The notes beneath the pieces are model-generated. The model was not told the origin of the DNA, made no database searches, and worked only from the letters and a program-made list of their open reading frames with translations. From Salpingoeca rosetta (lineage: Eukaryota; Protista; Choanoflagellata), in assembly GCA_033442325.1 (NCBI GenBank), contig JAWQFM010000024.1, positions 633,716-697,715 of the forward strand: DNA of 64,000 nt, given 5' to 3'. The translations under genes were made by a program, and so were the position numbers. Shown piece after piece: positions 1 through 22,666 of this stretch (positions are counted from its first letter, which is position 1; every line of letters begins with the position of its first letter).

Positions 1-3000
1 CTCGGCCAGTCCAACCTCATCCAGCACCACCACGGGCAGCACGTTGTCGTTGCTGGCTGTTTGCAGATACGCTTCCGCACGAGCAAACACCTGCAGGATA
101 CCCTCGCTCGTCGCCTCAACGCTGCCTTGGTACGCAAACACGGTGATGCCCGGGTACAACTTGAGCAGCGGGTCGCGCGAGTCTGGGCCGCGGAGACTGT
201 TGTTGACGAGGCTCATGCTCACCGTCTTGCTGTTGCCCGGCTTACCGACGAGGAAGATGGGGATGCGGTTGAGCAGCGACACGACAATGGAAAACGTGTT
301 CTCCAGCAAGGCCGCGTTCTCCGCCAAGTTCTGGAACTGCGGTGGCCGCCTGTCCATGCGGTCCACCATGTCCAGCTGCTCCTGATGCATGAACTTCAAC
401 AATGCTTTGGCTTTTGCCTGCTGCTCATCACCACCAATGCATCTCCTCAGTAGCGTTCGGCGTTGCGTATTGTCGGACAGGCGCACCATGTAGCACTGCA
501 TGAGCGACAGCCACGCGGCGTGCATGTTCGCCGTGAGCTCCGCCACGCGGACGTCACGCACGCACTTGTTGTGCGCAAGATCGCCACGGCGCTGCCGCCA
601 CGTCTTGAAGAACTTGAAGAGCGTGCAGAAGCGCTTGACGTCACGCAAGCTGATCATGTGGTCTGTCTGCGTCCTCAAGAAGTCGTGGCACTGATACAGC
701 ATGTGCACGACTGCGTTCTTCTCGTCCTGGTCCAGCCCAAGGCCGTCCACCATGCTGCCCATGTACAGTCGCTCGTCGCCAGCGGACAGCTCGCCAAAGT
801 CCCACACGTACGGCAGCATCGCCTCCGGCAGCGGGTGCACGCGGTACATGAGGTGCGACTGCGCGTCAATGGGCTGGCGCTCCGTGGTGACCAGCCCTGG
901 TGTTGGTGATGGGCGGTCACGGCGCTTGTACGGGTTGCACGCAGCCGCAATCTTGACGTTGTCCGGGATGGAGCGGGAGCCGCAGCGGCGGCGCACAATG
1001 ATGTCGGACAGCAGGTCGAGGTGTTCGCACGTGTTGATCTCGTCAAGGAAGACCCACACGGTCTTGCCTGCTGATTCTGCCACTGCCGCTGCCGTGGCAC
1101 GTGTGATGGCTGCGTTGACGTAAGCAACAATGTCCTGTGCAGTGGTGCCTGCATGGATGGCCAACGCACCGTCGTACACCACGTCGCGACGCATGTCTGC
1201 CAGCTGCTTGAAGAGGGACGTTTTGCCGCAACCTGCGTGGCCCATCAGAATGCACGGCACGTTGTTGGTGATGCGGATGTAGATCAGCACCATCTTCAGC
1301 ATGTTGTCCAGCGTCATGGCGTACTGGCCCTGCTCTCTGGTATTGGTGTGGTCAAGCAGATGCTGAACGCGCTCAAACAGCTCTTTCGAAGAGTGTGAAA
1401 CCATTGACCTGAGCGGCGCGAGCTGTGCCTCAAAGAAACGTTGCACCTCCTGTGGAACAGCCTGCGGGTCAGTGTAGAAAGGGTACACACACCCATCGTC
1501 AGCAGCGCACAGCATCCAGTGCGTCGCGCCTGATCCCGCGCCAGTCTGAATCCACGCCGGTACACGCTCCATGCGGCGCAGCATGTCATCTGTCATGGTT
1601 CCTTGCGAGTGCTGGTGGTGGTGCTGTGCTTGCCTCACTGCGTCGGCAGAAGGCACGGCAAACCGCCGAACTGTGTCCACCACAGCTGTGACCATGCCTC
1701 GGCGTATCTGGCGCGCTTGCTCTGGCGATAGCCCCATGTATGCGCAAAGCATCTGCTGTTGCACATACGCACTCGTGAACATGCGCGGCAGCTGCTGTGC
1801 TGTCACTCGAAGGAAAGCGTTGAGCTCGGCAAACGAGGCATGCCCCTCTTGCAGACGCGGGAAGTAGTGCTGAAGGAGCTCGAGGCAGCGCTCCCGCGGC
1901 AACGTTGGAATATCGACGAAGACTGTGGTGGCAATCTCTGCGCCGTACGTGAGGTGCGGCTCAACATATGCAGTGGACATGTCATTGGTGTGCAAGAGGT
2001 CCAAGTAGCGGCAGGCAAGCTGCATCGGGCTCTCAATGTCGGTGGACACGGTGACGTTCGACACATCCCAGGCAAGCCTGTGTGCACGAAACGGGGCTGC
2101 TGTTGTCAAGGACAGCTCGTCAAGCAGTCCGCTGTTGAGCGTGTTGCCGACCTCAACAAACACACGGAGTGAGGGTGGGATGTGCCACACGCGATCGTCT
2201 CTGGCCAAGCAGCGCAGCACCAGCAGCTGAAACAAATGCATGTTCAAGTCGGGCTCCACATTGAGGGCTGCGCCAACATCAATGTGTATGGCCCGCGGTG
2301 TGCTACCATCGCTGCTGATCCCAGGAAGGGCAGCAAGCTTCCCCAACAGTGTATCGAATGTGTCGTGGCCGGACACCAACAGCGTACAGGGCCGCTGCTC
2401 GGCATCAGCCTCGGCAGAGCGCATCTGCTCCTGAATCCACGTGGACTTTCCTTGCTGTGCCATTTCACTCGTCACCACAGTGACGTCTCCCTTGTCCTGT
2501 ATATGCAGGTCGACTTGGACTTTGAAGTCGTTGGCGGCGGTGATGTTACTGGCAACATCCTCCAAGTCCACGCCACTGATATCCACGAGCAGCTGCGCGT
2601 GTGTCGTGCGCTGACACACGACGCTGAGTCGAGGCAGAGGACGCCCGCGCAATTGCATGCCTGGGCGTCGTTCCATGTCTGGGCAAGGCGCCCTGGAGTG
2701 ACGAGGTGAGCACGGCGTAGTTGTCCACTGCCCCAGCTCGGCCTTGAGGTGCGCCTGTGCCTCGATGCTGAGGCGGCCAGGATGCACAAGTACGAATGGC
2801 GCGCCCGCACCAGGGTCCTGGCTGCGCTGGAGGAACAGGTGCAGTGTGTCTGGGTCCGTGTGTTTGGAGCAGAAGAGGCATTGTGCTGGAGCGAACCGCA
2901 GGTTGGCATCAGTGAAAGCTGCGAGGACGCATGTTGCTGTGGTCATGTCGTTGTCTGCAAGCATGACGCGCACGACGTCGTGTTTGGCGCCGTGCTGGAA

Positions 3001-5943
3001 GGGCGAAGGTGGAGGCGTGCTAGCTCGCGCCATCAGCGCTCGGGCAGACGTGGCATTGCTGCCGATGCTGTCTTGCACATCGGATAGCGCCATGCCCAGC
3101 TCGTATAGCGCTTCCTCGCCGCTCAGACCTTCAACATCAAACAGGCCATCATCGCCTGCCCAGTCTGAAAACTGCACGCTGTCCACGTGGGAACCAAACA
3201 GCAACGCCAACAGCTGCAGGCTCTCCTGCTCATCAAAGTCGCCCGTGTCTTCACAGAGAAAATGGGTCTGGAACAGAACAACAAGCTGCCTGTTTGAGAG
3301 CCGGGCAAGGGCTGGGAACCTTGCTCGTGCGCGCTGCAGGCTGGTGTTCCACATGCGCAGGTCCTGGACGAGTTCTTCGGCATACCCTTGCAACGACTCT
3401 TCATGCTCATCAGGGCGATGCACACAGGGAATGCGTCTGCGGTAATTGCTGCTGAACTCGCCGAGATGCCCGCTCTTGGCCAGTTTTGTAAGCTGCACCA
3501 GGGCCACGTCGACGTCGCGCAAGAGGTTACGAAACTGCAGCATGGTCTCACGCACCTCTGAATCCTCATCCGCAGAGAGCAGGCAAGCGCGCGCACGAAG
3601 GTCGCTGATGTCACGTTGGCCAAGCCTGGTGTTCCCCTCCTCCCCGACGAGCACGAGGGTGAAATCAGCAGTCTGGTGCAGCGTGTCGCAGTGGAACTCA
3701 ACGCATGCATGGAATGAAGGGTCCATGATCTTTCGGATTCTCTCGCGAGAAGCAGCGCCACGATCGGACACAGTCTCGACGAACATCTTCAAGCGAGGCA
3801 AGCTGGTATTGCAGATGCGAAGGAGCTGCGACAGTGAGTCGCGGCGCATAGCAGCACCAGTACGGTCGGCGGCGAATCGTGTGCCTGCGGTCTGCAGTGG
3901 CGCTTGCGTTTGATCGTATCGCTCGTGAAGTTTCTGTAGGTATGACTCGAAATCTGGGGCTTTCTCGTTCTCCAAAATCAGGGGCGCCATGAAGGAGTGC
4001 AGCTGAATGAAGGCATTGACCTGCTCCGACGTTGCCATGTATGCATCGGAGGCAAACGCCTCTGCACTCACGGTGTAGTGGCGGACGTCCTCGTGGCGTT
4101 GCTCGTAAAGGAATTCAAGAAGATCTGCTGAGTGTGCCAGCTCATGCACGACGTCCCACACCTCAGAGCGGGTTATCACACCCTCGACGCGCTGCACGGC
4201 ACGATGCAGCACCCCCAGCGTCTGCTCGTCGCCAGCATCAGGCTGCAACACGGCTTGAATGGTCTGTGTTAGGTGCGATGTGTTTGACGCGAGAAAACGT
4301 TCGCACACGCACAGCACGTGCTGCAGATCGGTGGCTCGGGCTTCGTACTCCTTGCGCTGAGCGTAGCTCGTGAGCTGTGCCTTGAGATCGCGGATGCTGG
4401 TACGTGTGCTTGTGCCTCGTTGGGATCGACCAAGGACGCGAAACAGCATGTCTACTTCAGGTGCGACTTGATCAGCGCTGAGATTGCCCCACATCACCTC
4501 CAAGGCACGCAGTGGTGTTGCTTCCGAAAGATGGAGAAAGTGGTTGGCATGGTCGCGTTGGGTCTTCACCGCTGTTGCAAGCGCCCTGTGCGCAGCAGAA
4601 GCTGATGGCTGGAAGTGGGAGATGTCGGGTTGGCGGGCAACACTAGCATCTCCGTCATCGCCATCGCCATCGTCATCGTCATCGTCATGAAGATCAGCGG
4701 ACATGCTGTTGTTGTGGTCGTCATCGTCGTCGTTGTTGTTGTTGTTGTTAATGAGTTGTTCGCGGTTGTCTTGGAGAGCCAGGATGTGTCTCACGTAAGC
4801 GCGGAAGGTGAGGCTGTCAGCCCGTTCAGAAACAGTGCGCAGATCATCAGCTTGGCTCCATTGTAGGATGCCTTGCCAGCGACTTGAGTTGGAGGCGCGC
4901 GATAGTGATTGGTCTCTCCATGTGCCCAGTTCACGCTGAAGCCTTTCAAGCCAAACATCTGACGGCAGCAGATGGTGTAACAAGCTGTGCAAGGCGCCAA
5001 CCAGTTGGCTTTCTTCCTCCAGTTTCTGTTGTGATGCAAATGCTGCGGTAACAATGTCCTCTGCGCAATGGCCAGCGTGCGTGACGAGGGACAGCAACGA
5101 GGTGAGCGCTTGCCTTTGTGCACGGACAACAGCAACATCGCGGCTCGTCTTCTTGAGATCGGCCCAGGCTTGCAGCTCCTGCACCAACACCCTGTGCGCT
5201 TCCTGCGCAGTCTGCGTTTCTGCCCACGCACGTGGTGAGTCAGCGCTGAGGATGCACTGCCACAGGGCCACGTGCTGCATCATGCTGCGGTACGACGTGG
5301 GCACCCGGATCAAAGCAAGAGCGTCCACGCCCAGCTGGTGGAACGTGGGATGGTGGGAATGGCTGTCATGTGCACCAGTTTGCAGGAGCTTGAGCACACG
5401 GCACAGATCGGCGTCGCTGGTGCGGCCAGAGCTGTGGCTTGCCGAAGCAAGCGCGCACACGCCTTTGCGTACAACGGCAAGCACCTCTTGGGCAGCACCC
5501 GCTCGATTCAGGTCAACGCAAGCGACGTTCTCCTGTGTGGCGCTCACCAGCTGCTCCAACAAGGTCATCGAGGGCGTATTGCACACACAGGCCACAACCA
5601 GTTGTGAGACAGGTTTCAGCCGCAGAGGGTCTGCACCGCGACAAGTTGGCCAAGGCTGCGTGCTGCGTGCTGTCGATGTCGAAGCAACGTTATCAGAGGG
5701 GACTTTGTGCTCTGCGCTGGCACTGCTGGGCGCGTCTTGCGGAACTTCCAGGCTGTTCTCTGGCGCATCACTGCTCTTATTCACGTGCCTGCTCTGCTCG
5801 TTTGCTCTGCTTGCAGCAATGACCTCGTCGTCGGCATCATCATCTTCATTTTCAGCAGCAGCAGCAGCAGCAGCAGCAGTAGCACTATGAGGAACAGCAG
5901 CATCAGCAGCATCATCATCACCATCACCATCATCATCATCATC

Positions 5944-6015
<72 letters not shown>

Positions 6016-8062
6016 GTCATCATCATCATCATCGGCAGCAGCAGCAGCAGTTGCTTCATTTGTATCAGCATCATCATTTGTAGCAGCATCATCATTTGTA
6101 GCAGCATCATCAGCGTCGTCAACACTGCCGTTACTGGGCGCCTGAGGTGGAGGAGTGAGAGCAGAAACGTGGCGCTGCAGCACAAGATCCAACTCGTGCG
6201 CATTGGCAAGCAGCTGCTTCACAGGCACTTGGAGGTGATCCGCAGTGCTCGAGCTGCTTGGGCGACGGGTGTGGCGACTGCCGTGGCTGGACAGCCACTG
6301 TTGCAGTGCACTGTTGGCCTTGGAAGTTGCTTTCACGTCAGCCCAGAGCTGGCACACGCTCTCAGCATCATCACGGGCCGTGCGCAGCACAGGCAACAGC
6401 AAGTTAGAGCACAAGCTGCTTGTCTTGCACTTTTCGAGAATGGTGGCCAGGAGGCGACTGCGCTGCTTCTTTGTCAGGATGTCGGACTGAGCCAGCTCAA
6501 CACTGCCATCCGCAAGTGTTTGCTGCTGTTGCAGCCCAGAAGCACTATCACTTGTTCTGGTGGCCCTGCTGCTGTTGGTGGTGGCGGTGGCACTGAGCTG
6601 GGACAGCCAAGCGTTGAAGACGACGTGCTTGGCGTCAGGGGTGTCCCTCATGAAACTCATGAAAGCTGTCGATGTGTTGTTGGAAGTGTTTGCGAGCGCA
6701 ATTTCAAGCTTCTTGTGGAAATCGTTGGGCCACTGCTCCCGCACATGCACAGCAAAATCGTGCTGGGTGATGAACGACAAGATTGAGGGGAGGTCATGCT
6801 GTGCTTGCATCACCCATGCGGCCAGTTGCACCTGTGTTTTCTTCGGCACCTTGACCGTCACCTCCTCCTTGTGTTTGCTGAGGAAGTCTGCGACTGCCAT
6901 CAGCATGGTATGGTGCTGTGTTGGACTGGGACGGAAGCCCTTTGGCAAACCAGCTTCGCACGTGAGGTTGCGCTGGCCAAAGCGGGGCTTCAGCGCTTGC
7001 ACGAGAGCAACAAACGCAAAGTTGTTTCGGCCGCACGCGGAGTCACGACTCTGGCCACAGTTCAGGATGGCTTTCAGCAGACGCAGGTGCCCACGCTTGG
7101 TGTCGGCGGCAGAGGGGCGCGCAGGAGACAACAGCCGCACAACGCTGTCGTCAGCGATGAGCAGCTCCTGCAAGGCCAGACGGGTGTGCGAGCTTGTGGC
7201 ACTTGAGCCAAGCTGCTTCTGAATGCTCTCATTGTCGGTAGCGTTCAGGAGCTGGAGGACGTTTTGCCCAGTGAGCTGCCTTGCAAACTGTGTGTCTCCA
7301 AACAGGAACTGGCACAGGGTCTGTGCCGGGATGGTGCGAAGAAGCGCCTTCAGCACACGCATGGCACCTTTGCCCCTGCCTTTGTTGGTGCTGCTGTTGC
7401 TGGTGCTGGTGCTGGTGCTGGTGCTGCTGGTACTGCTGGTGCCGGTGGTGCCGGTGGCGGTGGTGTTGTCGTCGTTGTTGCTGCTTAATTTGAAGCAGTG
7501 GCGCACGAAACAGCGCGTCGCATTGCCTGACAGAGCACTGCCATCTGTTTTGAAATCGCTGAAGATGTGTATGTGTGCTTGGCCTGGTGTGAGCCGTGTG
7601 TGTCGATTGTCTTTGTCCTGCCACGTCACAGCGTCACCATTGGAGTTGAACAATGAGACAAAACGGTCGGCCAAACCTCGCTGCTCCTTCCTCTTCACTT
7701 TGACGAGCTTGTGCGACAAGGTGCGGTCAGTGGTCTTGCCAGGCATGAGCTGGAGAGTGCGGTGGTAGTAGCTGCGTTTAGCGTCCATGCGTGTTTCCTG
7801 CAACCGCGTGTCTTCCGTTGGCAGCCATTCTTCTTTGTTGTCCTTGCCATTGAACCGCTGGCCCAGCTTTTCGTGCGATCCAAGAAGATGCAGCTCCAGG
7901 CCAGGCTCCTCAAGTACGTGCACATGCTATCCGTGCATGATTGTGGTGGCAGTGGTTGCGGTGTGTCCGTGTGGCATGGAGGGGTGAGAGAGTGGAGAGA
8001 GTGAGAGAGTGAGAGAGTGTGTGAGACGAAAGATGCGTTTGTGTTTGGGTGTGTGTGTGTGT

Positions 8063-8112
<50 letters not shown>

Positions 8113-9197
8113 TGTGTGTGTTGTGTTNNNNNNNNNNNNNNNNNNNNNNNNNNNNNNNNNNNNNNNNNNNNNNNNNNNNNNNNNNNNNNNNNNNNNNNNN
8201 NNNNNNNNNNNNNNNNNNNNNNNNNNNNNNNNNNNNNNNNNNNNNNNNNNNNNNNNNNNNNNNNNNNNNNNNNNNNNNNNNNNNNNNNNNNNNNNNNNNN
8301 NNNNNNNNNNNNNNNNNNNNNNNNNNNNNNNNNNNNNNNNNNNNNNNNNNNNNNNNNNNNNNNNNNNNNNNNNNNNNNNNNNNNNNNNNNNNNNNNNNNN
8401 NNNNNNNNNNNNNNNNNNNNNNNNNNNNNNNNNNNNNNNNNNNNNNNNNNNNNNNNNNNNNNNNNNNNNNNNNNNNNNNNNNNNNNNNNNNNNNNNNNNN
8501 NNNNNNNNNNNNNNNNNNNNNNNNNNNNNNNNNNNNNNNNNNNNNNNNNNNNNNNNNNNNNNNNNNNNNNNNNNNNNNNNNNNNNNNNNNNNNNNNNNNN
8601 NNNNNNNNNNNNNNNNNNNNNNNNNNNNNNNNNNNNNNNNNNNNNNNNNNNNNNNNNNNNNNNNNNNNNNNNNNNNNNNNNNNNNNNNNNNNNNNNNNNN
8701 NNNNNNNNNNNNNNNNNNNNNNNNNNNNNNNNNNNNNNNNNNNNNNNNNNNNNNNNNNNNNNNNNNNNNNNNNNNNNNNNNNNNNNNNNNNNNNNNNNNN
8801 NNNNNNNNNNNNNNNNNNNNNNNNNNNNNNNNNNNNNNNNNNNNNNNNNNNNNNNNNNNNNNNNNNNNNNNNNNNNNNNNNNNNNNNNNNNNNNNNNNNN
8901 NNNNNNTCTCGGGCAGTTTGACTGAAGGCGGTGAAGGAGCTGCCGTTGAATCGGGTTTGTAGCCAAGCCCATGATGTCTTGCAGCAAGCCAATCAGCCCT
9001 CGTGAAGCGGGTGCTTCAAGCCCCTGTTCTGGCAGCTGTGGTTGCTGCTGCTGCTGGGCACTTGACTGACTTGAGCTGGCTGCTGTTGTGATTGTGTTGA
9101 CACTGCTGGTGGTGGTGCTGCTGCTGCCATCAGCATGCTGGGACTTCTTCTTGTTGTCGCTCGATGGCTTCTTGCGACGTCTGTTCTTTCGACCCAT
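1..9197 (-). CDS. RNF213: RNF213/mysterin-like giant AAA+ ATPase (N-terminal part through AAA4; 3' end lies beyond the window)
   Basis: Probable first exon starts at ATG 9197 (MGRKNRRRKK...) and runs into the gap at 8128-8906. A large exon follows the acceptor 'tag' and runs 7926->1; both ends and every stretch I translated are in one frame. Motifs in RNF213 order: AAA1-like 'CLFCSKHTDPDTLHLFLQRS', AAA2 'VVTSEMAQQGKSTWI' (~2434-2478), AAA3 'YAMTLDNMLKMVLIYIRITNNVPCILMGHAGCGKTSLFKQL' (Walker A 1219-1242), 'VWVFLDEINT', 'IAACNPY', 'LVYRVHPLPEAMLPYVWDFGELS', 'VSLRDVKRF', AAA4 'NAALLENTFSIVVSLLNRIPIFLVGKPGNSKT' and 'VVVLDEVGLAE' (1-33). The E3 module is not visible, so orthology is not proven. 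Confidence 0.88.
5896..6031 (-). repeat. (GAT)n-rich coding repeat giving a poly-Asp/Gly acidic tract in the RNF213-like N-terminal region
   Basis: Plus strand (ATC)n. In the frame of the long exon it reads DDDDDGDDD... Confidence 0.85.
8128..8906. other. Assembly gap (Ns) inside the RNF213-like gene
   Basis: Run of N; may hide the end of exon 1 and further exons. Confidence 0.99.
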
Positions 9198-9686
9198 GAT
9201 GAGAGAGAGGCTGATGGTGATGGGGCGATCCCTCAGCCTCTTGTGAGTTTGGAGACTTGAAGACAGGAAGACAAGGCTACAAGGGGTGGGTTGCTGAGGC
9301 TGTTGGCGCGTCCGTGCGGCGCGGTAAGCAATACGGAAGCGTGAAGAGAGAAGAAAAAGGCAGAAAATGAGAAAGAGAAAGGTGGGGGGAGAGAAAACAG
9401 CTGCAGAGAGACGAAAAGGCTTCTTGGAGGTCAAACCTGTTCGTGGAGCTGACACGGAGAGCAGAGAGAAGAAGGAGAGAAAGAGCAGAGAGAAAGACAA
9501 CAAGGCTGGCGCCCCTGCTCTGCCACTGCGCTTACGTGGCTGTCAGTTCCACCTCACCAGACCTCACTGTCCGCAAACCAAACACAGAGCGAAAGTTTGC
9601 CTTTGGTTTGTGTGCTTTCGATTTTTTCAAGAAGTTATTCAATAATTGTCTTGAACGACAGCGACATACAGAACCACACATCGAAG
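9198..9686. promoter_or_regulatory. Short divergent intergenic region, putative bidirectional promoter (RNF213-like / LRR kinase)
   Basis: About 490 bp between the opposing ATGs at 9197(-) and 9687(+), with a GA/CT-rich tract. No defined promoter motif identified. Confidence 0.5.
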
Positions 9687-9904
9687 ATGAGGCAGTGCTG
9701 GTGGCTGTTGCTGATGATCGTGGTGTCTGCTGTTGTGCATGTGTGGGGTGCACAGAGCAAGCGCAGCAGTGTGCATGCTGCCACCATCGCACACCAAAGC
9801 ACGGTGTGTGTGTGTGTGTCTGTGTGTGTGTGTGTGTGTGTCTGTGTGTGTGTCTGTCTGTCTGTGTGTGTGTGTGTCTGTGTGTGTGTGTGTGTCTGTC
9901 TGTC

Positions 9905-9964
<60 letters not shown>

Positions 9965-12900
9965 TGTGTGTGTGTGTCTCGTGTGTGTGTCGTGTGTGTG
10001 TCGTGTGTGTGTGCGTGTGTGTCTGTTGTTCTGTGTGCGTGTGTGTGTGTGTGTGTGTCTGTGTGTGTGTGTGTGCGACCTGTGCTCTGTCGTCGCCTTT
10101 CTGCCTTTATCTTCTTCTCGCCTAACCCCGTGGCTTCCTCCTTCTTCACCCCGTGCCACACTCTTGATTCACCCCGACTGTCGTCTGCTCTCAAGCGCCA
10201 ACGTTTTCGTTCCTCCTCCGTCTTGCACAGCCCTCTTCCTCAGCTTTCTCACGCCAACACTCACTCACACGCACATCCGCAGGGTGATGAAGAACACAAC
10301 AAGCAGCTGTTATGCAGACAGGTGGACGACGTGTTAGAGCGGCTCGCATTGAGGCTCCAAGAGGACCAAGAGGAGGAAAGCTCAGCAAGAACAAGAAACA
10401 GAAGCAGGAGAACCGATCATCATCATCATCATCATCATCATCATGAGCAGCATCATCATGAGCAGCATCACAACCAGCAACGGCAACAACAGCAACAAAT
10501 CGTCCACTTTGATCATGGCCTCAGTGTACCACAGAGAAGAGCAGGGGCAAGGCATCTGTGGGACCCGCAGCCGCTTGATCTGTCTCCGATCAGAACCATG
10601 GCACAGTTGTTCGGCTGCTGCGTCAACTGTAGCGTTTCTCACACCAACCCAACGACAACGAGAGCCGGCAACCACTCTCAACAGCACCACCAGCATGATC
10701 AGAATGGAGGAAGCCTCAGCAAAACCACCACTGTGGGACAACAGCTCACAACACGTGCCTGGGAATCGCATCGACCCACCAGCCGCGCTACAAACACTCG
10801 TCGGGTTCGGCGTGACACCCCACTGCTCCTCTCGCGCCAGCTCTCGGAAGGCTTTTGCACGCTCGCCAGCCTGTTTGACAGCACGTGTCCGGGGCCCTTG
10901 AACAACCACACCCTCACCATCACCTTTGAAGGGGAAACTGCGATCGACCACAACGAAAACGCCACCGCCTCAGGGCGCGCCCTGCTCGACTCCTTCTCCG
11001 CTGACGTGCATGAACTGACGCTGCGTGGCATCATTCATGACCAGCCGCTCCAGTGGCTCCTCCACAACGTCGATTGGAGTGCCCTCAGCAGCATCACCCT
11101 GGAAGGCCTGCAGGCCCCCGAGTTCCAGTTTCACCTTCTCAACAGCTTGCAGGGCATCTCCGACGTGCGCATCCGGCACCACGCCCACCTCTCCATCTCA
11201 ACGCGCGCCTTCACCCGTGCGCACCAGCTCTCCACGCTCAGCTTGCGCAACAACTCCCTGCTCGCACTGCCTGAGCACGCGTTTGCCGGCATGACCGCGC
11301 TACGCGTACTGGACTTGCGGCAGAACCGCATCCGAACCGTGAGCGCAGCCATCCTCGCGCCCCTGTCCAGCGTCCGGCAGCTGCTGCTCGACTTCAACTT
11401 GGTCAGCAGCATTGAGCCGAGCGCCTTTAACACCACAACGCAGCTTACCATGCTCACGCTCAGCTTCAACGCCATGTCAGCCATTCCAGACGGCCTCTTC
11501 CACCCACTCTCGCGGCTGCGGCGCCTCAATCTCGGCGGCAACCCCATCCACAGCCTACGTCCAGCGACGTTCAGTTCCCAAACGGCCCTGCAAGAGCTGA
11601 ACCTCGACAACATGCTCTTGCAAAGCGTCCCACCACACCTGTTTGCTCACAACACGCGCCTGAGGATCCTCTACCTCTTCCGCAACTTCCTCACCTCGCT
11701 GCCGGAAGATCTGCTTGCAGGCATGTCGCAGCTGCGTGACCTCTTTCTCGATGGCAACCGACTCACCGCGCTTCAGGACGGCCTCTTTCGACACCTGACC
11801 GCGCTGGACTTCCTCACCGTCTCCCACAACCAGCTGACCACGCTCCCGCGTGGGTTGTTTGACAATTGCACCGCCCTGCGCGTGATCCATGCTCAAGGCA
11901 ACAAGCTTGCGTTGCTGCCTCCCGGTGTGTTCCGCAGCACCCCCTCGCTGCAACTCGTGTACCTGGCAAACAACAGGCTGCGGTCCATTGATGGCGTGTT
12001 TGAACAGACCACGCCCACCCTCGTGCGCGTTGATCTGGACCACAACCAGCTCTCGCGCTTCGAGGTGAACGCGCCGCTCTCACGCCTGTCAGCAATTACC
12101 CTCCGCAACAATCCGCTCGCCTCCCTGCCAGACCTGGCGGGCATGCACGTGCTGCAGGAGTTGCGACTGCTCAACCACCACATTCAGCGGCTGGACCTCA
12201 CGCCCGTCCTCGCCTCGGCCTCATTGCAAATCGTCCAGCTCGATGCGTCGCCCGATGCCAAGTCTGTTGCGCTCGTGGACACGGCCCAACTGGCGTCGCG
12301 CCCACCGCCAACACAGCTGCACACGCTGCACCTCTCCCACATTGACACCCGCGCCCTGTTCCGCCAGGCCTTGCCCCCACTGTCCCTCAATCGACTGCAC
12401 CTCGGTTGGCCTGGGATGAACGAGGACTCCGTCCCGCTGTCGCACATCTGTCGCCTCCTCGCCGACAGTGTTCAGGACATTTCGCTCACGACAACCATGT
12501 ACAAGACCGTGAGCCTTTGCGATAACAAAACCTATCATGCCGTCTTTCTCCAGGACAACACCGCGCTCAGGACGGTTGAAGTGCCTACGGGTGTGAGGAC
12601 GCTGAACGTGTCTGGGTGCCATGCCCTGGATCGCATCGATGTGCCGTTTGTGGACGTGCTTGATGTGTCGCAGACCTTGCTTGGGCCGAGCCAAGCCGTC
12701 TGCGACACGTTGGGACGCCGCATCCTGTTTGCGCGGGACATGAATCCAGCCAAGTTTCGCACGCTCGAGGTCAGCGTGACGCTGCGGCGCTGTTTGGAGC
12801 GCTTGGACGTTCTTGACCTCTCTCGCAACTCCTGGCTGGATTTGCCTGGGGAGCTCTCGCGACTCACGAGCCGCCCCGTCGCCCTCTCATCGCAGCCGCG

Positions 12901-14787
12901 GCTCACAGCTGATCTCGTCATCATCCGCTCCCGAGCAGCGCCACCTCTGCTGCAAGTCGCGGGCACGCCCGTGCAGTGTAACCTGCAACTTGGCAATGAA
13001 GACCTCCGGCTTCCTCTTGGCATTGCAACCTTCGTCACCGAAACTGTGTACACCTTCCACTGCACGTGCGCACGCGGTTTCAAGCTGACGTCAGGCGGGC
13101 GGTGCGTGGTGGACAACCCAGACATTGCCGGCATTGCCGTTGGCTCTGTGATTGGCGGGTTGTTCTTTGGCCTGTTTGTGGCGTGGCTGTCACGCCGCTA
13201 CCGTGGCCTGACCAAGCGCATTGACCTGCAGGAGCAGCTGCTGGTGGAGAGGGATGAGGAGGTGATGGCGCTGAAGAAGGCGTGGGAGATTGAGTACGAT
13301 GAGCTGAGGATGACCAAGCGTGTTGCAGCGGGTGCGTTTGGCGTGGTGTTTGAGGCAGAGTGGGACACGGTGATGGTGGCAGTGAAAGTGCTGCAGCAAG
13401 CCGTCATGGCGTTTGACGAGAGCACGGTGCTTGAGTTTGAGAAGGAGGTGGAGTTCCTGCAACGGACACGGCACCCGAATGTGGTGCGATTCTTTGGGGC
13501 GGGCACAAACCCCAGCGGCAGCCCGTTCCTGGTGCTGGAGTTTGTGGCAATGGGGTCACTCAAGGATCTGCTGGGGAAAGATATGGAACAGGTGTTGAGG
13601 GAGGTGAGGAACAGGAAGGTTGAGGAGAGCAACAGCAGCAGTGGTGGTGTCAGGGATGATGTGAACAGTGTGTGGGAGTTGAAGCTGCGCTTGCTGCGTG
13701 ACATTGCGAGTGGCATGGCTTTTATCCACAGTCTGGACCAGATGCATCGGTGAGTGTGTGTATGCGTGTGTGTTTGCGTGTGTGTGTGTGTGCGTTTGTG
13801 TGTGTTTGTGTATGTGCGTTTGAAGCTGCGTTTCTATGTTTGCATGCAGGTACGCACTCTTGCCCACTGCACCATCCTACCCTCAACCCACCACCACTTC
13901 CACACTCATTCACACCCACAGAGACCTGAAGAGCGGCAACGTGCTGGTGTCATCGTCGCTTCGCGCCAAAATCACGGATTTCGGGTCCATTCGCCAGTGC
14001 TTTACACGTGGTGGAGGTGGCAGAGCCCACGGCAGCAGCCACACTCGCCTGTCGTCCAGCCAAGCTGACGATGATCCGCAATACAGCCAGCGCACTGGAC
14101 TGCAGACAATGGCCAGCATGACGCTGACGGCTGGCGTGGGCACGCCGCTGTACATGGCGCCAGAGGCATTGATGGGTGACAAGTACAGCTTCGGCGCAGA
14201 CGTGTTCAGCTTTGGCGTGTTGATGTGGGAGGTGGCGACACAGCGACCACCGGATCTGATTGAGCAAGAGAAGGGGGGCGACTTTAGGGGGCCTCTGCTT
14301 CCTGCAATCACGGAGCTCCTGACTGAGGGCAAGCGCCTCAAGTTTCATGACACAGATGGTGAGTCCCATGTGTGTGTGCGTGTGTGCGTGTGTGTTTGTT
14401 TGTTGTTCAGACGTTTCCACACATATGTACATGGCTTGTGCACGTGCGTTGTTCACGCTGCAGTTCATGTGGCTGTTGTGTTGCATTGCCGCCACTTTTC
14501 ACCTCACTTTGATCTCTTACCGATCATGCTCTTCTCTCATAACCTTGTACAAATCACTATTAATCACACCAACCAACCTCACATGCACAATGCGCACGTG
14601 GACACGTGCACACATGCACACGTGGACACATTCACACATGCACACACGCAACAATGCAGGCATCCCAGAGTGGTTCGAGACATTGACACTGGACTGCATG
14701 GCACACGACCCGGCACAGCGCCCAAGCTTCAACGAGCTGAAGCTGAACCGACTTGGGGGACACACGCGCAACATGCTTAAATCGTAG
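9687..14787 (+). CDS. LRR receptor-like kinase: signal peptide, LRR ectodomain, EGF-like motif, single TM, TKL-group kinase
   Basis: Exons 9687-9803 (MRQCWWLLLMIVVSAVVHVWG signal peptide), 10283-13749, 13922-14358, 14660-14787, all GT-AG and phase-compatible. At least 12 LRRs of ~24 aa (LxxLxLxxNxLxxLPxGLF), 'CTCARGFKLTSGGRCV', TM 'IAGIAVGSVIGGLFFGLFVAWL', kinase motifs AGAFGVV, VAVK, HR|DLKSGN, DFG, GTPLYMAPE, DVFSFGV. Confidence 0.92.
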
Positions 14788-15041
14788 ACATTGTCACACC
14801 GTTAGTGATAACGTGAGTGTAGATTATCTGAGCCACTGTCACCCATCGTGGGTACATTAAATGAGCAGCCACGTGTTTGACACCCGCTTCACTGCGCAAA
14901 GGCCATTCTGTTTGCGTGAAGTGTTTCATGTTTACTTGCCTGGATGACCAGAGCAATTGCGAAAGGGTATTGCGACTTGTGACACGACACAACACGACAC
15001 AATCAATCATTCACACCGAACCCCGCAAACCAAGCCCTGAA

Positions 15042-22666
<7,625 letters not shown>

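What the first reader, a model, noticed from the sequence alone, without database searches (positions are those of the whole stretch)
1..14787. RNF213-like giant ATPase head-to-head with an LRR receptor kinase: candidate pre-metazoan bacterial-sensing locus
Seen: an RNF213-type AAA core gene and an LRR-TM-kinase gene diverge from a ~490 bp spacer. Established: vertebrate RNF213 ubiquitylates LPS on cytosolic bacteria, and LRR ectodomains serve as pattern-recognition modules in TLRs and plant RLKs. Inference: in a bacterivorous unicellular holozoan, a surface LRR sensor and an intracellular RNF213-like effector could be co-regulated as an ancient cell-autonomous immunity unit. Caveat: every gene pair in this window is divergent, so adjacency alone is weak evidence.
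Basis: partly seen in the sequence, partly recalled or inferred. Interest (0 to 1): 0.75.

Follow-up and report, generated by a model that had tools for sequence, protein, structure and literature searches.

The report
RNF213-like ligase beside LRR receptor kinase
In the choanoflagellate Salpingoeca rosetta, a complete relative of the human antibacterial ubiquitin ligase RNF213 lies head-to-head with a leucine-rich-repeat receptor kinase, but the kinase belongs to a family of about 80 genes and no other RNF213-like copy has such a neighbour, so the pairing is probably not a functional unit.

Summary
On the minus strand, one open frame of 5,462 codons runs from window 7926 to 8,459 bases left of the window. 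It encodes an RNF213 homologue with intact AAA3/AAA4 Walker motifs, a C3HC4 RING and an RZ finger. On the plus strand, 9687-14787 is a four-exon gene for a signal peptide-LRR-TM-TKL kinase, annotated as S. rosetta XP_004990656.1.

The 489-bp spacer depends on an unverified first exon (9197-8907) that runs open into the assembly gap. The gap lies at the exon 1/intron 1 border and not inside the giant exon. GenBank starts the ligase at window 7788.

The proposed sensor-effector unit is not supported:
- The kinase family has at least 79 loci.
- None of the four other RNF213-like loci has an LRR kinase within about 10 kb.
- Cross-species linkage and co-expression could not be tested.

One oddity remains. 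This ligase gene sits between two LRR kinases, and two paralogues adjoin a kinase gene and a ROCO-TIR gene. That enrichment is post hoc, with P about 0.02.

The scan had already noted RNF213-like genes at other loci of this genome. Both genes are new members of known kinds.

The parts
1..7926 (-). N-terminal 2,642 codons of the giant exon of the RNF213-like gene. The exon continues 8,459 nt left of the window (L003:1541-10000), for 5,462 codons in all, with the stop codon at window -8462..-8460. Motifs inside the window: AAA3 Walker A at 1219-1242 and Walker B at 1033-1053; AAA4 Walker A at 223-246 and Walker B at 1-33. Motifs left of the window: RING at -4580..-4467 and RZ finger at -5954..-5847.
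7927..8127 (-). 3' end of intron 1 of the RNF213-like gene: a CA microsatellite, a pyrimidine tract and an AG acceptor at 7927-7928. The same acceptor, directly before the conserved HVHV start of the exon, is present in paralogues C29a and C29b.
8128..8906 (.). Assembly gap. It hides the end of candidate exon 1 and the start of intron 1, and is flanked by a microsatellite.
8907..9197 (-). Candidate exon 1 of the RNF213-like gene: ATG at 9197, then 97 open codons (a basic stretch followed by a Ser/Thr/Gln-rich stretch) running into the gap. It is unique in the genome and absent from the GenBank model.
9198..9686 (.). 489-bp spacer between the two start codons, the presumed bidirectional promoter region. 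It is unique in the genome.
9687..9803 (+). LRR receptor kinase exon 1: 39 codons with a hydrophobic signal peptide.
9804..10282 (+). Intron 1 of the kinase gene, almost entirely TG microsatellite.
10283..13749 (+). LRR receptor kinase exon 2. In order: a short helical pro-module; an R-S-R-R furin-type site at 10400-10411; a His/Gln-rich run; an LRR array from about 11020 to about 12900; a Cys-rich EGF-like stretch starting at 12977; a TM helix at 13124-13189; and the kinase N-lobe from about 13304, with the VAVK lysine at 13376-13393.
13922..14358 (+). LRR receptor kinase exon 3: HRDLKSGN catalytic loop, DFG, an insert of about 45 aa in the activation segment, and the APE motif.
14660..14787 (+). 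LRR receptor kinase exon 4: end of the C-lobe and TAG stop at 14785-14787. There is no TIR or other tail domain.

Best explanation
These are two separate, real genes of Salpingoeca rosetta that are neighbours because of how the genome is organised, not because they form a dedicated module.

Gene 1 (minus strand) encodes a giant RNF213-family enzyme of about 5,500 residues. It has a dynein-like AAA ring in which the AAA3 and AAA4 Walker A/B motifs are conserved, so ATP binding and hydrolysis are inferred. It has a C3HC4 RING and an RZ finger that keeps the catalytic-type Cys and His, so E2-dependent ubiquitin transfer by the RZ finger is inferred. Activity on lipid or sugar hydroxyls, as in vertebrate RNF213, is pure inference.

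Gene 2 (plus strand) encodes a secreted-pathway receptor. It has a signal peptide, a small pro-piece ending in an R-x-R-R furin-type site, about 20 LRRs, a TM helix and an apparently active TKL-group Ser/Thr-type kinase. It is one of at least 79 paralogues whose ectodomains have diverged to about 40% identity, while the TM/kinase ends are kept alike, probably by gene conversion.

The ligase gene lies between two such receptor genes. The right one shares its 5' intergenic region with the ligase, which is the normal arrangement in this gene-dense genome.
For: Ligase identity:
- AAA3-AAA4 aligns to mouse and human RNF213 at E 1e-53, with both Walker A and both Walker B motifs conserved.
- The following AAA part aligns at E 6e-25.
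- The RZ-type finger scores 37 bits against a cut-off of 27.
- RING and RZ motifs were read directly, and the C-x-C-G form of the RZ finger recurs in paralogues and in metagenome homologues.

Receptor identity: Pfam LRR plus kinase. The closest solved kinases are CTR1, IRAK4 and TAK1. GenBank names it 'TKL protein kinase' and its CDS span is identical to mine.

Family size and mosaic pattern: at least 79 loci. The left neighbour shows 90% nucleotide identity over 12923-14742, introns included, but only 42% amino-acid identity in the ectodomain, the same as about 25 other members.

Linkage among paralogues: no LRR kinase lies near the other four RNF213-like loci. Their neighbours are UBX and La; RhoGAP and a kinase; kinesin and Roc-COR.

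Chance: random placement gives P about 0.11 for at least one adjacency among ten gene ends. The GenBank gene order is - + - + with short spacers.
Against: - This ligase gene is flanked on both sides by LRR receptor kinases, which a naive random-placement null gives only about 0.4% of the time for five loci.
- Two of the three other close paralogues also have a signalling gene of immune-like type as a direct neighbour: a protein kinase after C29a, and a Roc-COR gene with a sub-threshold TIR match after C29b.
- A shared spacer of 489 bp would allow co-regulation.
- Expression was not examined.
Confidence: 0.75

Rival explanations
1. One reading: the surface LRR receptor kinase and the cytosolic RNF213-like ligase are co-regulated from one bidirectional promoter and act as sensor and effector of a cell-autonomous antibacterial response.
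For: The genes are head-to-head with 489 bp between candidate start codons. The ligase keeps the catalytic motifs of the vertebrate enzyme. The receptor ectodomain is hypervariable within its family, as expected of a recognition module.
Against: The linkage is absent at all four other RNF213-like loci. The receptor family is so large that adjacency is cheap. Divergent pairing is the local default. The spacer length rests on an unverified exon, and GenBank puts the ligase start about 1.9 kb away. No pathway is known from a TKL receptor kinase to RNF213 (my own knowledge, not tested).
Confidence: 0.1
2. A looser 'defence island' reading: RNF213-like genes in this genome tend to sit in neighbourhoods rich in LRR, TKL-kinase, ROCO and TIR genes. 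This could be because such genes work together, or because fast-duplicating families pile up in the same plastic regions.
For: LRR kinases flank both sides here. A kinase lies directly after paralogue C29a. A Roc-COR gene with a TIR_2 match lies tail-to-tail with C29b. Two of five loci lie within 4 kb of an LRR kinase, COR or TIR hit; my rough estimate from the counts is a per-locus P of about 0.02.
Against: The categories were chosen after seeing the data. These families are large: at least 79 LRR kinases, about 45 COR loci and about 38 TIR hits. The C22 and C3 loci show nothing of the kind. Co-location of duplicating families needs no shared function.
Confidence: 0.12
3. Assembly artefact: the gap at 8128-8906 joins two unrelated pieces, so the two genes are not truly adjacent.
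For: A gap of estimated length lies between the giant exon and the kinase gene.
Against: The same order and spacing are present in the independent GenBank scaffold GL832977.1. Intron-like sequence with a conserved acceptor sits left of the gap, and an open, coding-like frame on the same strand sits right of it. The gap is flanked by a microsatellite, the usual cause of such gaps.
Confidence: 0.03

Closest known systems
Vertebrate RNF213 (mysterin), PDB 6TAX/6TAY, 7OIK, 8S24
   Same: Giant single polypeptide. The AAA3 and AAA4 Walker A/B motifs align residue by residue (the Walker B of AAA4 is identical over 11 residues). A C3HC4 RING follows the AAA core, and the RZ finger has the catalytic-type Cys, the CxxC pair and a downstream His.
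   Different: Only 36-40% identity in the AAA core, and no detectable sequence similarity in the N-arm, E3 shell or C-terminal domain. The zinc-ligand His (human H4509) is replaced, with a Cys two residues earlier instead (C-x-C-G form). The N-terminal CBM20 is not detectable by Pfam or BLASTP. It is one of at least five paralogous loci. No function has been tested.
Plant LRR receptor-like kinases (RLK/Pelle) and animal IRAK/TKL kinases
   Same: The order signal peptide-LRR ectodomain-single TM-cytosolic kinase, with an HRDLKxxN Ser/Thr-type catalytic loop. It belongs to a large, tandemly clustered family with hypervariable ectodomains.
   Different: Membership of the RLK/Pelle/IRAK clade is not shown. 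The best solved match is the Raf-like CTR1, with IRAK4 and TAK1 close behind, all at modest E-values. It carries a pro-piece with a furin-type site and a poly-His run. The architecture probably arose independently in choanoflagellates.
Toll-like receptors and choanoflagellate 'Kinase TLRs' (LRR-TM-kinase-TIR; the latter recalled from Richter et al. 2018, not re-read here)
   Same: An LRR ectodomain and a single TM helix. The LRR part hits insect and vertebrate TLRs and chaoptin at 25-30% identity.
   Different: There is no TIR domain anywhere in the gene, so it is neither a TLR nor a Kinase TLR.

Membership tests
RNF213 family | Dynein-like AAA core with nucleotide-binding AAA3 and AAA4 (Walker A and B) | tested here: met
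   phmmer against RNF213 chains gives E 1e-53. The alignment shows GxxGxGKT and DE in AAA3, and GKPGxSK[ST] and the VVVLDEVGLAE block in AAA4. AAA1-2 and AAA5-6 were not resolved individually.
RNF213 family | RING finger downstream of the AAA core | tested here: met
   zf-C3HC4 scores 22.8 bits against a cut-off of 21. The full C3HC4 spacing was read in the sequence at residues 4132-4169 of the giant exon.
RNF213 family | RZ finger with catalytic Cys/His | tested here: met
   PF20173 scores 37.1 bits against a cut-off of 27. The alignment to mouse RNF213 keeps the VG[ED]CG cysteine and the CxxC pair, and a His follows at +1 spacing. The first zinc-ligand His is replaced; the C-x-C-G form is shared with paralogues and with metagenome homologues P0035 and P0086.
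RNF213 family | E3 shell and C-terminal domain homologous to RNF213 | tested here: inconclusive
   No sequence match outside RING and RZ in the PDB search. The word-based search found nothing. Full HMMER found only two short marine-metagenome fragments for the C-terminal domain. No structure was predicted.
RNF213 family | N-terminal stalk with CBM20 domain | tested here: inconclusive
   No Pfam hit at E up to 1 in the first 400 residues. There was no BLASTP match to the homologue P0086, for which the database records a CBM20 (PF00686) domain. The fold was not tested.
RNF213 family | Ubiquitylation of LPS / antibacterial coat formation | not testable with these tools
   This needs biochemistry or genetics.
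LRR receptor kinase (architecture class) | Signal peptide, LRR ectodomain, one TM helix, cytosolic active kinase | tested here: met
   VAVK, HRDLK, DFG and APE are all present. The model matches the GenBank protein of 1,382 aa.
RLK/Pelle-IRAK kinase clade | Kinase domain groups with IRAK/Pelle/plant RLKs | tested here: inconclusive
   The best PDB hits are CTR1 (E 2e-15 for the N-lobe, 4e-8 for the C-lobe), then KSR/Raf, TAK1 and IRAK4. No tree was built.
Toll-like receptor / Kinase TLR | Cytosolic TIR domain | tested here: not met
   No TIR hit in any exon or in the downstream frames.
Functionally coupled divergent gene pair | Linkage conserved among paralogues | tested here: not met
   The four other RNF213-like loci lack an LRR kinase within about 10 kb.
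Functionally coupled divergent gene pair | Linkage conserved in other species | not testable with these tools
   No other choanoflagellate genome could be reached. The nearest relatives of the C-terminal part are contigs of about 2 kb from marine sequencing runs. S. rosetta and M. brevicollis share little synteny in general (PMC4054682).
Functionally coupled divergent gene pair | Correlated expression | not tested
   The FPKM tables of PMC4054682 are truncated in the held copy and the PTSG ids are unknown.

The most novel reading that the evidence does not exclude
RNF213-family ligases of S. rosetta sit preferentially beside LRR, TKL-kinase, ROCO and TIR signalling genes: LRR kinases on both sides here, a kinase spliced or adjacent at C29a, and a ROCO-TIR gene at C29b. 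On this reading these are eukaryotic 'defence neighbourhoods', and at this locus a bidirectional promoter couples a hypervariable surface receptor to an RZ-finger ligase that acts on ingested or invading bacteria.
Probability: 0.1. Interest if true: 0.75.

Novelty: new member of a known kind. Interest (0 to 1): 0.33.

Why it matters
Open-access literature treats RNF213 as a vertebrate protein (PMC7311170). Only one held paper mentions both RNF213 and choanoflagellates, and there the choanoflagellate remark concerns the RZ domain of ZNFX1.

A copy with intact ATPase motifs, RING and RZ finger in a genetically tractable bacterivore would let the ancestral role of this ligase be tested directly. 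It might have handled bacteria, lipid droplets or something else.

The specific claim of this finding, a linked sensor-effector locus, would be notable if true, because eukaryotic immune genes are rarely organised as operon-like pairs. The evidence here does not support it beyond a weak, post hoc neighbourhood signal.

Tried and rejected
1. Reading the ligase gene straight through the gap. Rejected, because the frame that stays open across the N run (7698-9542) is not the frame of the giant exon, and the left flank is an intron.

2. Looking for exon 1 in the paralogues. No match anywhere else in the genome, so exon 1 rests on codon usage and the conserved acceptor only.

3. A shared promoter sequence. 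The 489-bp spacer has no second copy in the genome. The sigma-70 scan does not apply to a eukaryote.

4. Cross-species synteny.
   - Two word-based searches did not return the S. rosetta ligase itself or any choanoflagellate genome locus.
   - The full HMMER search of the E3 part gave only short contigs from marine sequencing runs.

5. Co-expression from Fairclough et al. 2013. The held supplements are cut, and searching by CDS length found neither gene.

6. CBM20 at the N-terminus. No support from Pfam or BLASTP. It was not folded.

7. TLR or Kinase-TLR reading of the receptor. Rejected, because there is no TIR.

8. The spliced receptor protein was never joined.
Full report
**Layout and the gap**

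The window is contig C24:633716-697715 of a 55.4-Mb assembly. The plus-strand gene's exon 2 is 100% identical to the GenBank protein XP_004990656.1 / EGD77312.1, 'TKL protein kinase [Salpingoeca rosetta]', on scaffold GL832977.1 of GCA_000188695.1. The organism is therefore the choanoflagellate S. rosetta.

The gap (8128-8906) was examined first.
- Left of it is a CA/TG microsatellite and a pyrimidine tract ending in an AG acceptor at 7927-7928.
- Right of it, on the minus strand, an ATG at 9197 opens a frame of 97 codons that runs into the gap without a convincing phase-0 donor.
- The gap therefore covers the exon 1/intron 1 border of the minus-strand gene. It does not interrupt the giant exon.
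- The frame that happens to stay open across the N run is a different frame and means nothing.

**The ligase gene**

From 7926 leftwards one frame stays open for 5,462 codons. It leaves the window and ends 8,459 bases to the left.
- Residues 2200-2642 align to mouse and human RNF213 structures at E 1e-53. Walker A and B of both active modules, AAA3 and AAA4, are conserved.
- The next 420 residues align at E 6e-25.
- In the part outside the window, Pfam finds a C3HC4 RING and an RZ-type zinc finger above its curated cut-off.
- The RZ finger keeps the catalytic-type cysteine, the CxxC pair and a downstream histidine. The first zinc-ligand histidine is replaced, with a cysteine two positions earlier. 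Paralogues and metagenome homologues carry the same variant.

Parts that could not be matched:
- The N-arm, E3 shell and C-terminal domain show no sequence similarity to vertebrate RNF213.
- A CBM20 at the N-terminus, proposed in another note of this scan, is not detectable by Pfam or BLASTP.

**Start of the ligase gene**

GenBank begins the protein at Met47 of the giant exon (window 7788; 5,275 aa). The 46 codons before that Met are conserved in paralogues, and these have the same acceptor directly before the same HVHV start, preceded by a CA-repeat intron. The true start codon should therefore lie in an upstream exon.

The candidate at 9197-8907 has the best codon-usage score of six frames and falls within the coding range. 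It has no homologue elsewhere in the genome. The '~490 bp spacer' (489 bp from ATG to ATG) is therefore plausible but not shown.

**The receptor kinase gene**

- Exon 1 (9687-9803) is a signal peptide.
- Intron 1 is nearly pure TG repeat.
- Exon 2 (10283-13749) holds a small pro-module, an R-S-R-R furin-type site, a poly-His/Gln run, the LRR array, a Cys-rich stretch, the TM helix and the kinase N-lobe.
- Exon 3 (13922-14358) holds HRDLKSGN, DFG, a long activation-segment insert and APE.
- Exon 4 (14660-14787) ends the protein.
- The four exons add up to 4,149 nt, exactly the GenBank CDS.
- There is no TIR domain.
- The closest solved kinases are CTR1, Raf/KSR, TAK1 and IRAK4, which makes it a TKL-group kinase.
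- The exons were searched one by one by reference. The joined protein was not built.

**How special is the adjacency?**

The TM/kinase part finds at least 79 full loci of this receptor family in the genome, many in clusters.

The nearest relative lies just beyond the 3' end of the ligase gene, on the plus strand. Its end lies within a few hundred bases of the ligase stop codon, by my estimate, so the ligase gene sits between two receptor genes.
- The two share 90% nucleotide identity over 12923-14742, introns included.
- They share only 42% amino-acid identity in the ectodomain, no more than about 25 other members do.
- This points to local gene conversion of the 3' part, not a recent tandem duplication. 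It matches a mosaic pattern that another agent noted in this family.

The genome has four other RNF213-like loci. I fetched 40-60 kb around each.
- None has an LRR kinase, and the genome-wide list shows none within 80 kb.
- Their neighbours are UBX and La-domain genes (C22); RhoGAP and a protein kinase (C29a); kinesin and a Roc-COR gene with a sub-threshold TIR match (C29b).

Under random placement:
- 1.1% of the genome lies within 4 kb of a family member.
- That gives P about 0.11 for at least one adjacency among the ten ends of five loci.
- It gives about 0.004 for one locus flanked on both sides.
- Adding COR and TIR hits, two of five loci have such a neighbour. My rough estimate is P about 0.02, with categories chosen after the fact.

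GenBank's gene order here is - + - + with short spacers, so divergent pairing is the norm.

**What could not be tested**

- Co-expression. The expression tables of Fairclough et al. 2013 are truncated in the held copy and I could not obtain the PTSG ids.
- Synteny in another choanoflagellate. The searches returned animal and metagenome homologues at 36-40% identity for the AAA core. For the C-terminal domain they returned only two fragments on contigs of about 2 kb from marine sequencing runs. The two sequenced choanoflagellates share little synteny anyway (PMC4054682).

**Verdict**

The sequence observation is confirmed and both gene identifications are correct. The ligase has the full set of recognisable RNF213 catalytic elements.

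The functional pairing is unsupported. The one linkage test available failed, and the receptor family is so large that a neighbour of this kind is cheap. A weak, post hoc signal remains that RNF213-like genes lie near LRR, kinase, ROCO and TIR genes, and it deserves a proper genome-wide test.

Other notes of this scan had already flagged RNF213-like genes at other loci of the same genome, and the RING/RZ part of this very gene.

Noticed in passing
window 1-1870 and L003 about 8700-10000 (giant-exon residues about 2017-3101), versus C29:411.5-414.5 kb, C29:875.3-878.5 kb, C22:1141.9-1145.3 kb: The four close RNF213-like paralogues share 82-88% nucleotide identity only over the AAA3-AAA5 segment. 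Elsewhere they are 25-43% identical at the protein level and invisible to blastn. This looks like gene conversion, or very uneven constraint, confined to the ATPase core.
   Followed up: partly
L015:8763-9578 (-) and L016:2-2038 (-), i.e. C29:886.8-890.0 kb: A minus-strand gene with Roc (weak), COR-A (E 9e-19) and a C-terminal TIR_2 match (E 1.8e-5, below the cut-off) lies tail-to-tail with an RNF213-like paralogue. COR and TIR hits about 1.1 kb apart recur at a dozen or so other loci, which suggests a ROCO-TIR gene family.
   Followed up: partly
proteins P0003-P0120, e.g. P0086, P0035, P0115: Hundreds of RNF213-like proteins of about 4,000-4,600 aa come from ENA, Logan and JGI metagenome contigs of 13-23 kb, apparently as single ORFs. 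They are 38-40% identical to the AAA core here. Some carry RZ (P0035, P0115), and one carries both CBM20 and RZ (P0086). Their source organisms were not examined.
   Followed up: no
window 10400-10480 (+): Directly after the R-S-R-R furin-type site, the receptor has a run of nine His followed by further His and Gln residues ([18 protein letters not shown]). Cleavage would expose a poly-His N-terminus, so a possible metal-binding or pH-sensing tip.
   Followed up: no
window 7788-7926 (-): The GenBank model of the ligase (5,275 aa) starts at Met47 of the giant exon. It omits 46 codons that are conserved in paralogues, and it is 141 residues shorter than the open frame downstream of that Met, so it probably contains spurious introns.
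   Followed up: partly
window 7960-8127, 9804-10100, 13751-13820, 14365-14400, 15035-15140: Nearly every intron and several intergenic stretches here are filled with TG/CA dinucleotide microsatellites, and the assembly gap abuts one. These repeats produce many long spurious open frames rich in Cys-Val or His-Thr.
   Followed up: no
L004:3206-5113 (+) and L004:55-2754 (+), i.e. 15-20 kb left of the window: Two long plus-strand open frames (636 and 900 codons) lie upstream of the left-hand LRR kinase. They have no Pfam domain apart from a weak teneurin TTR-like match. Another note of the scan describes a large surface-protein-like module in this area.
   Followed up: no
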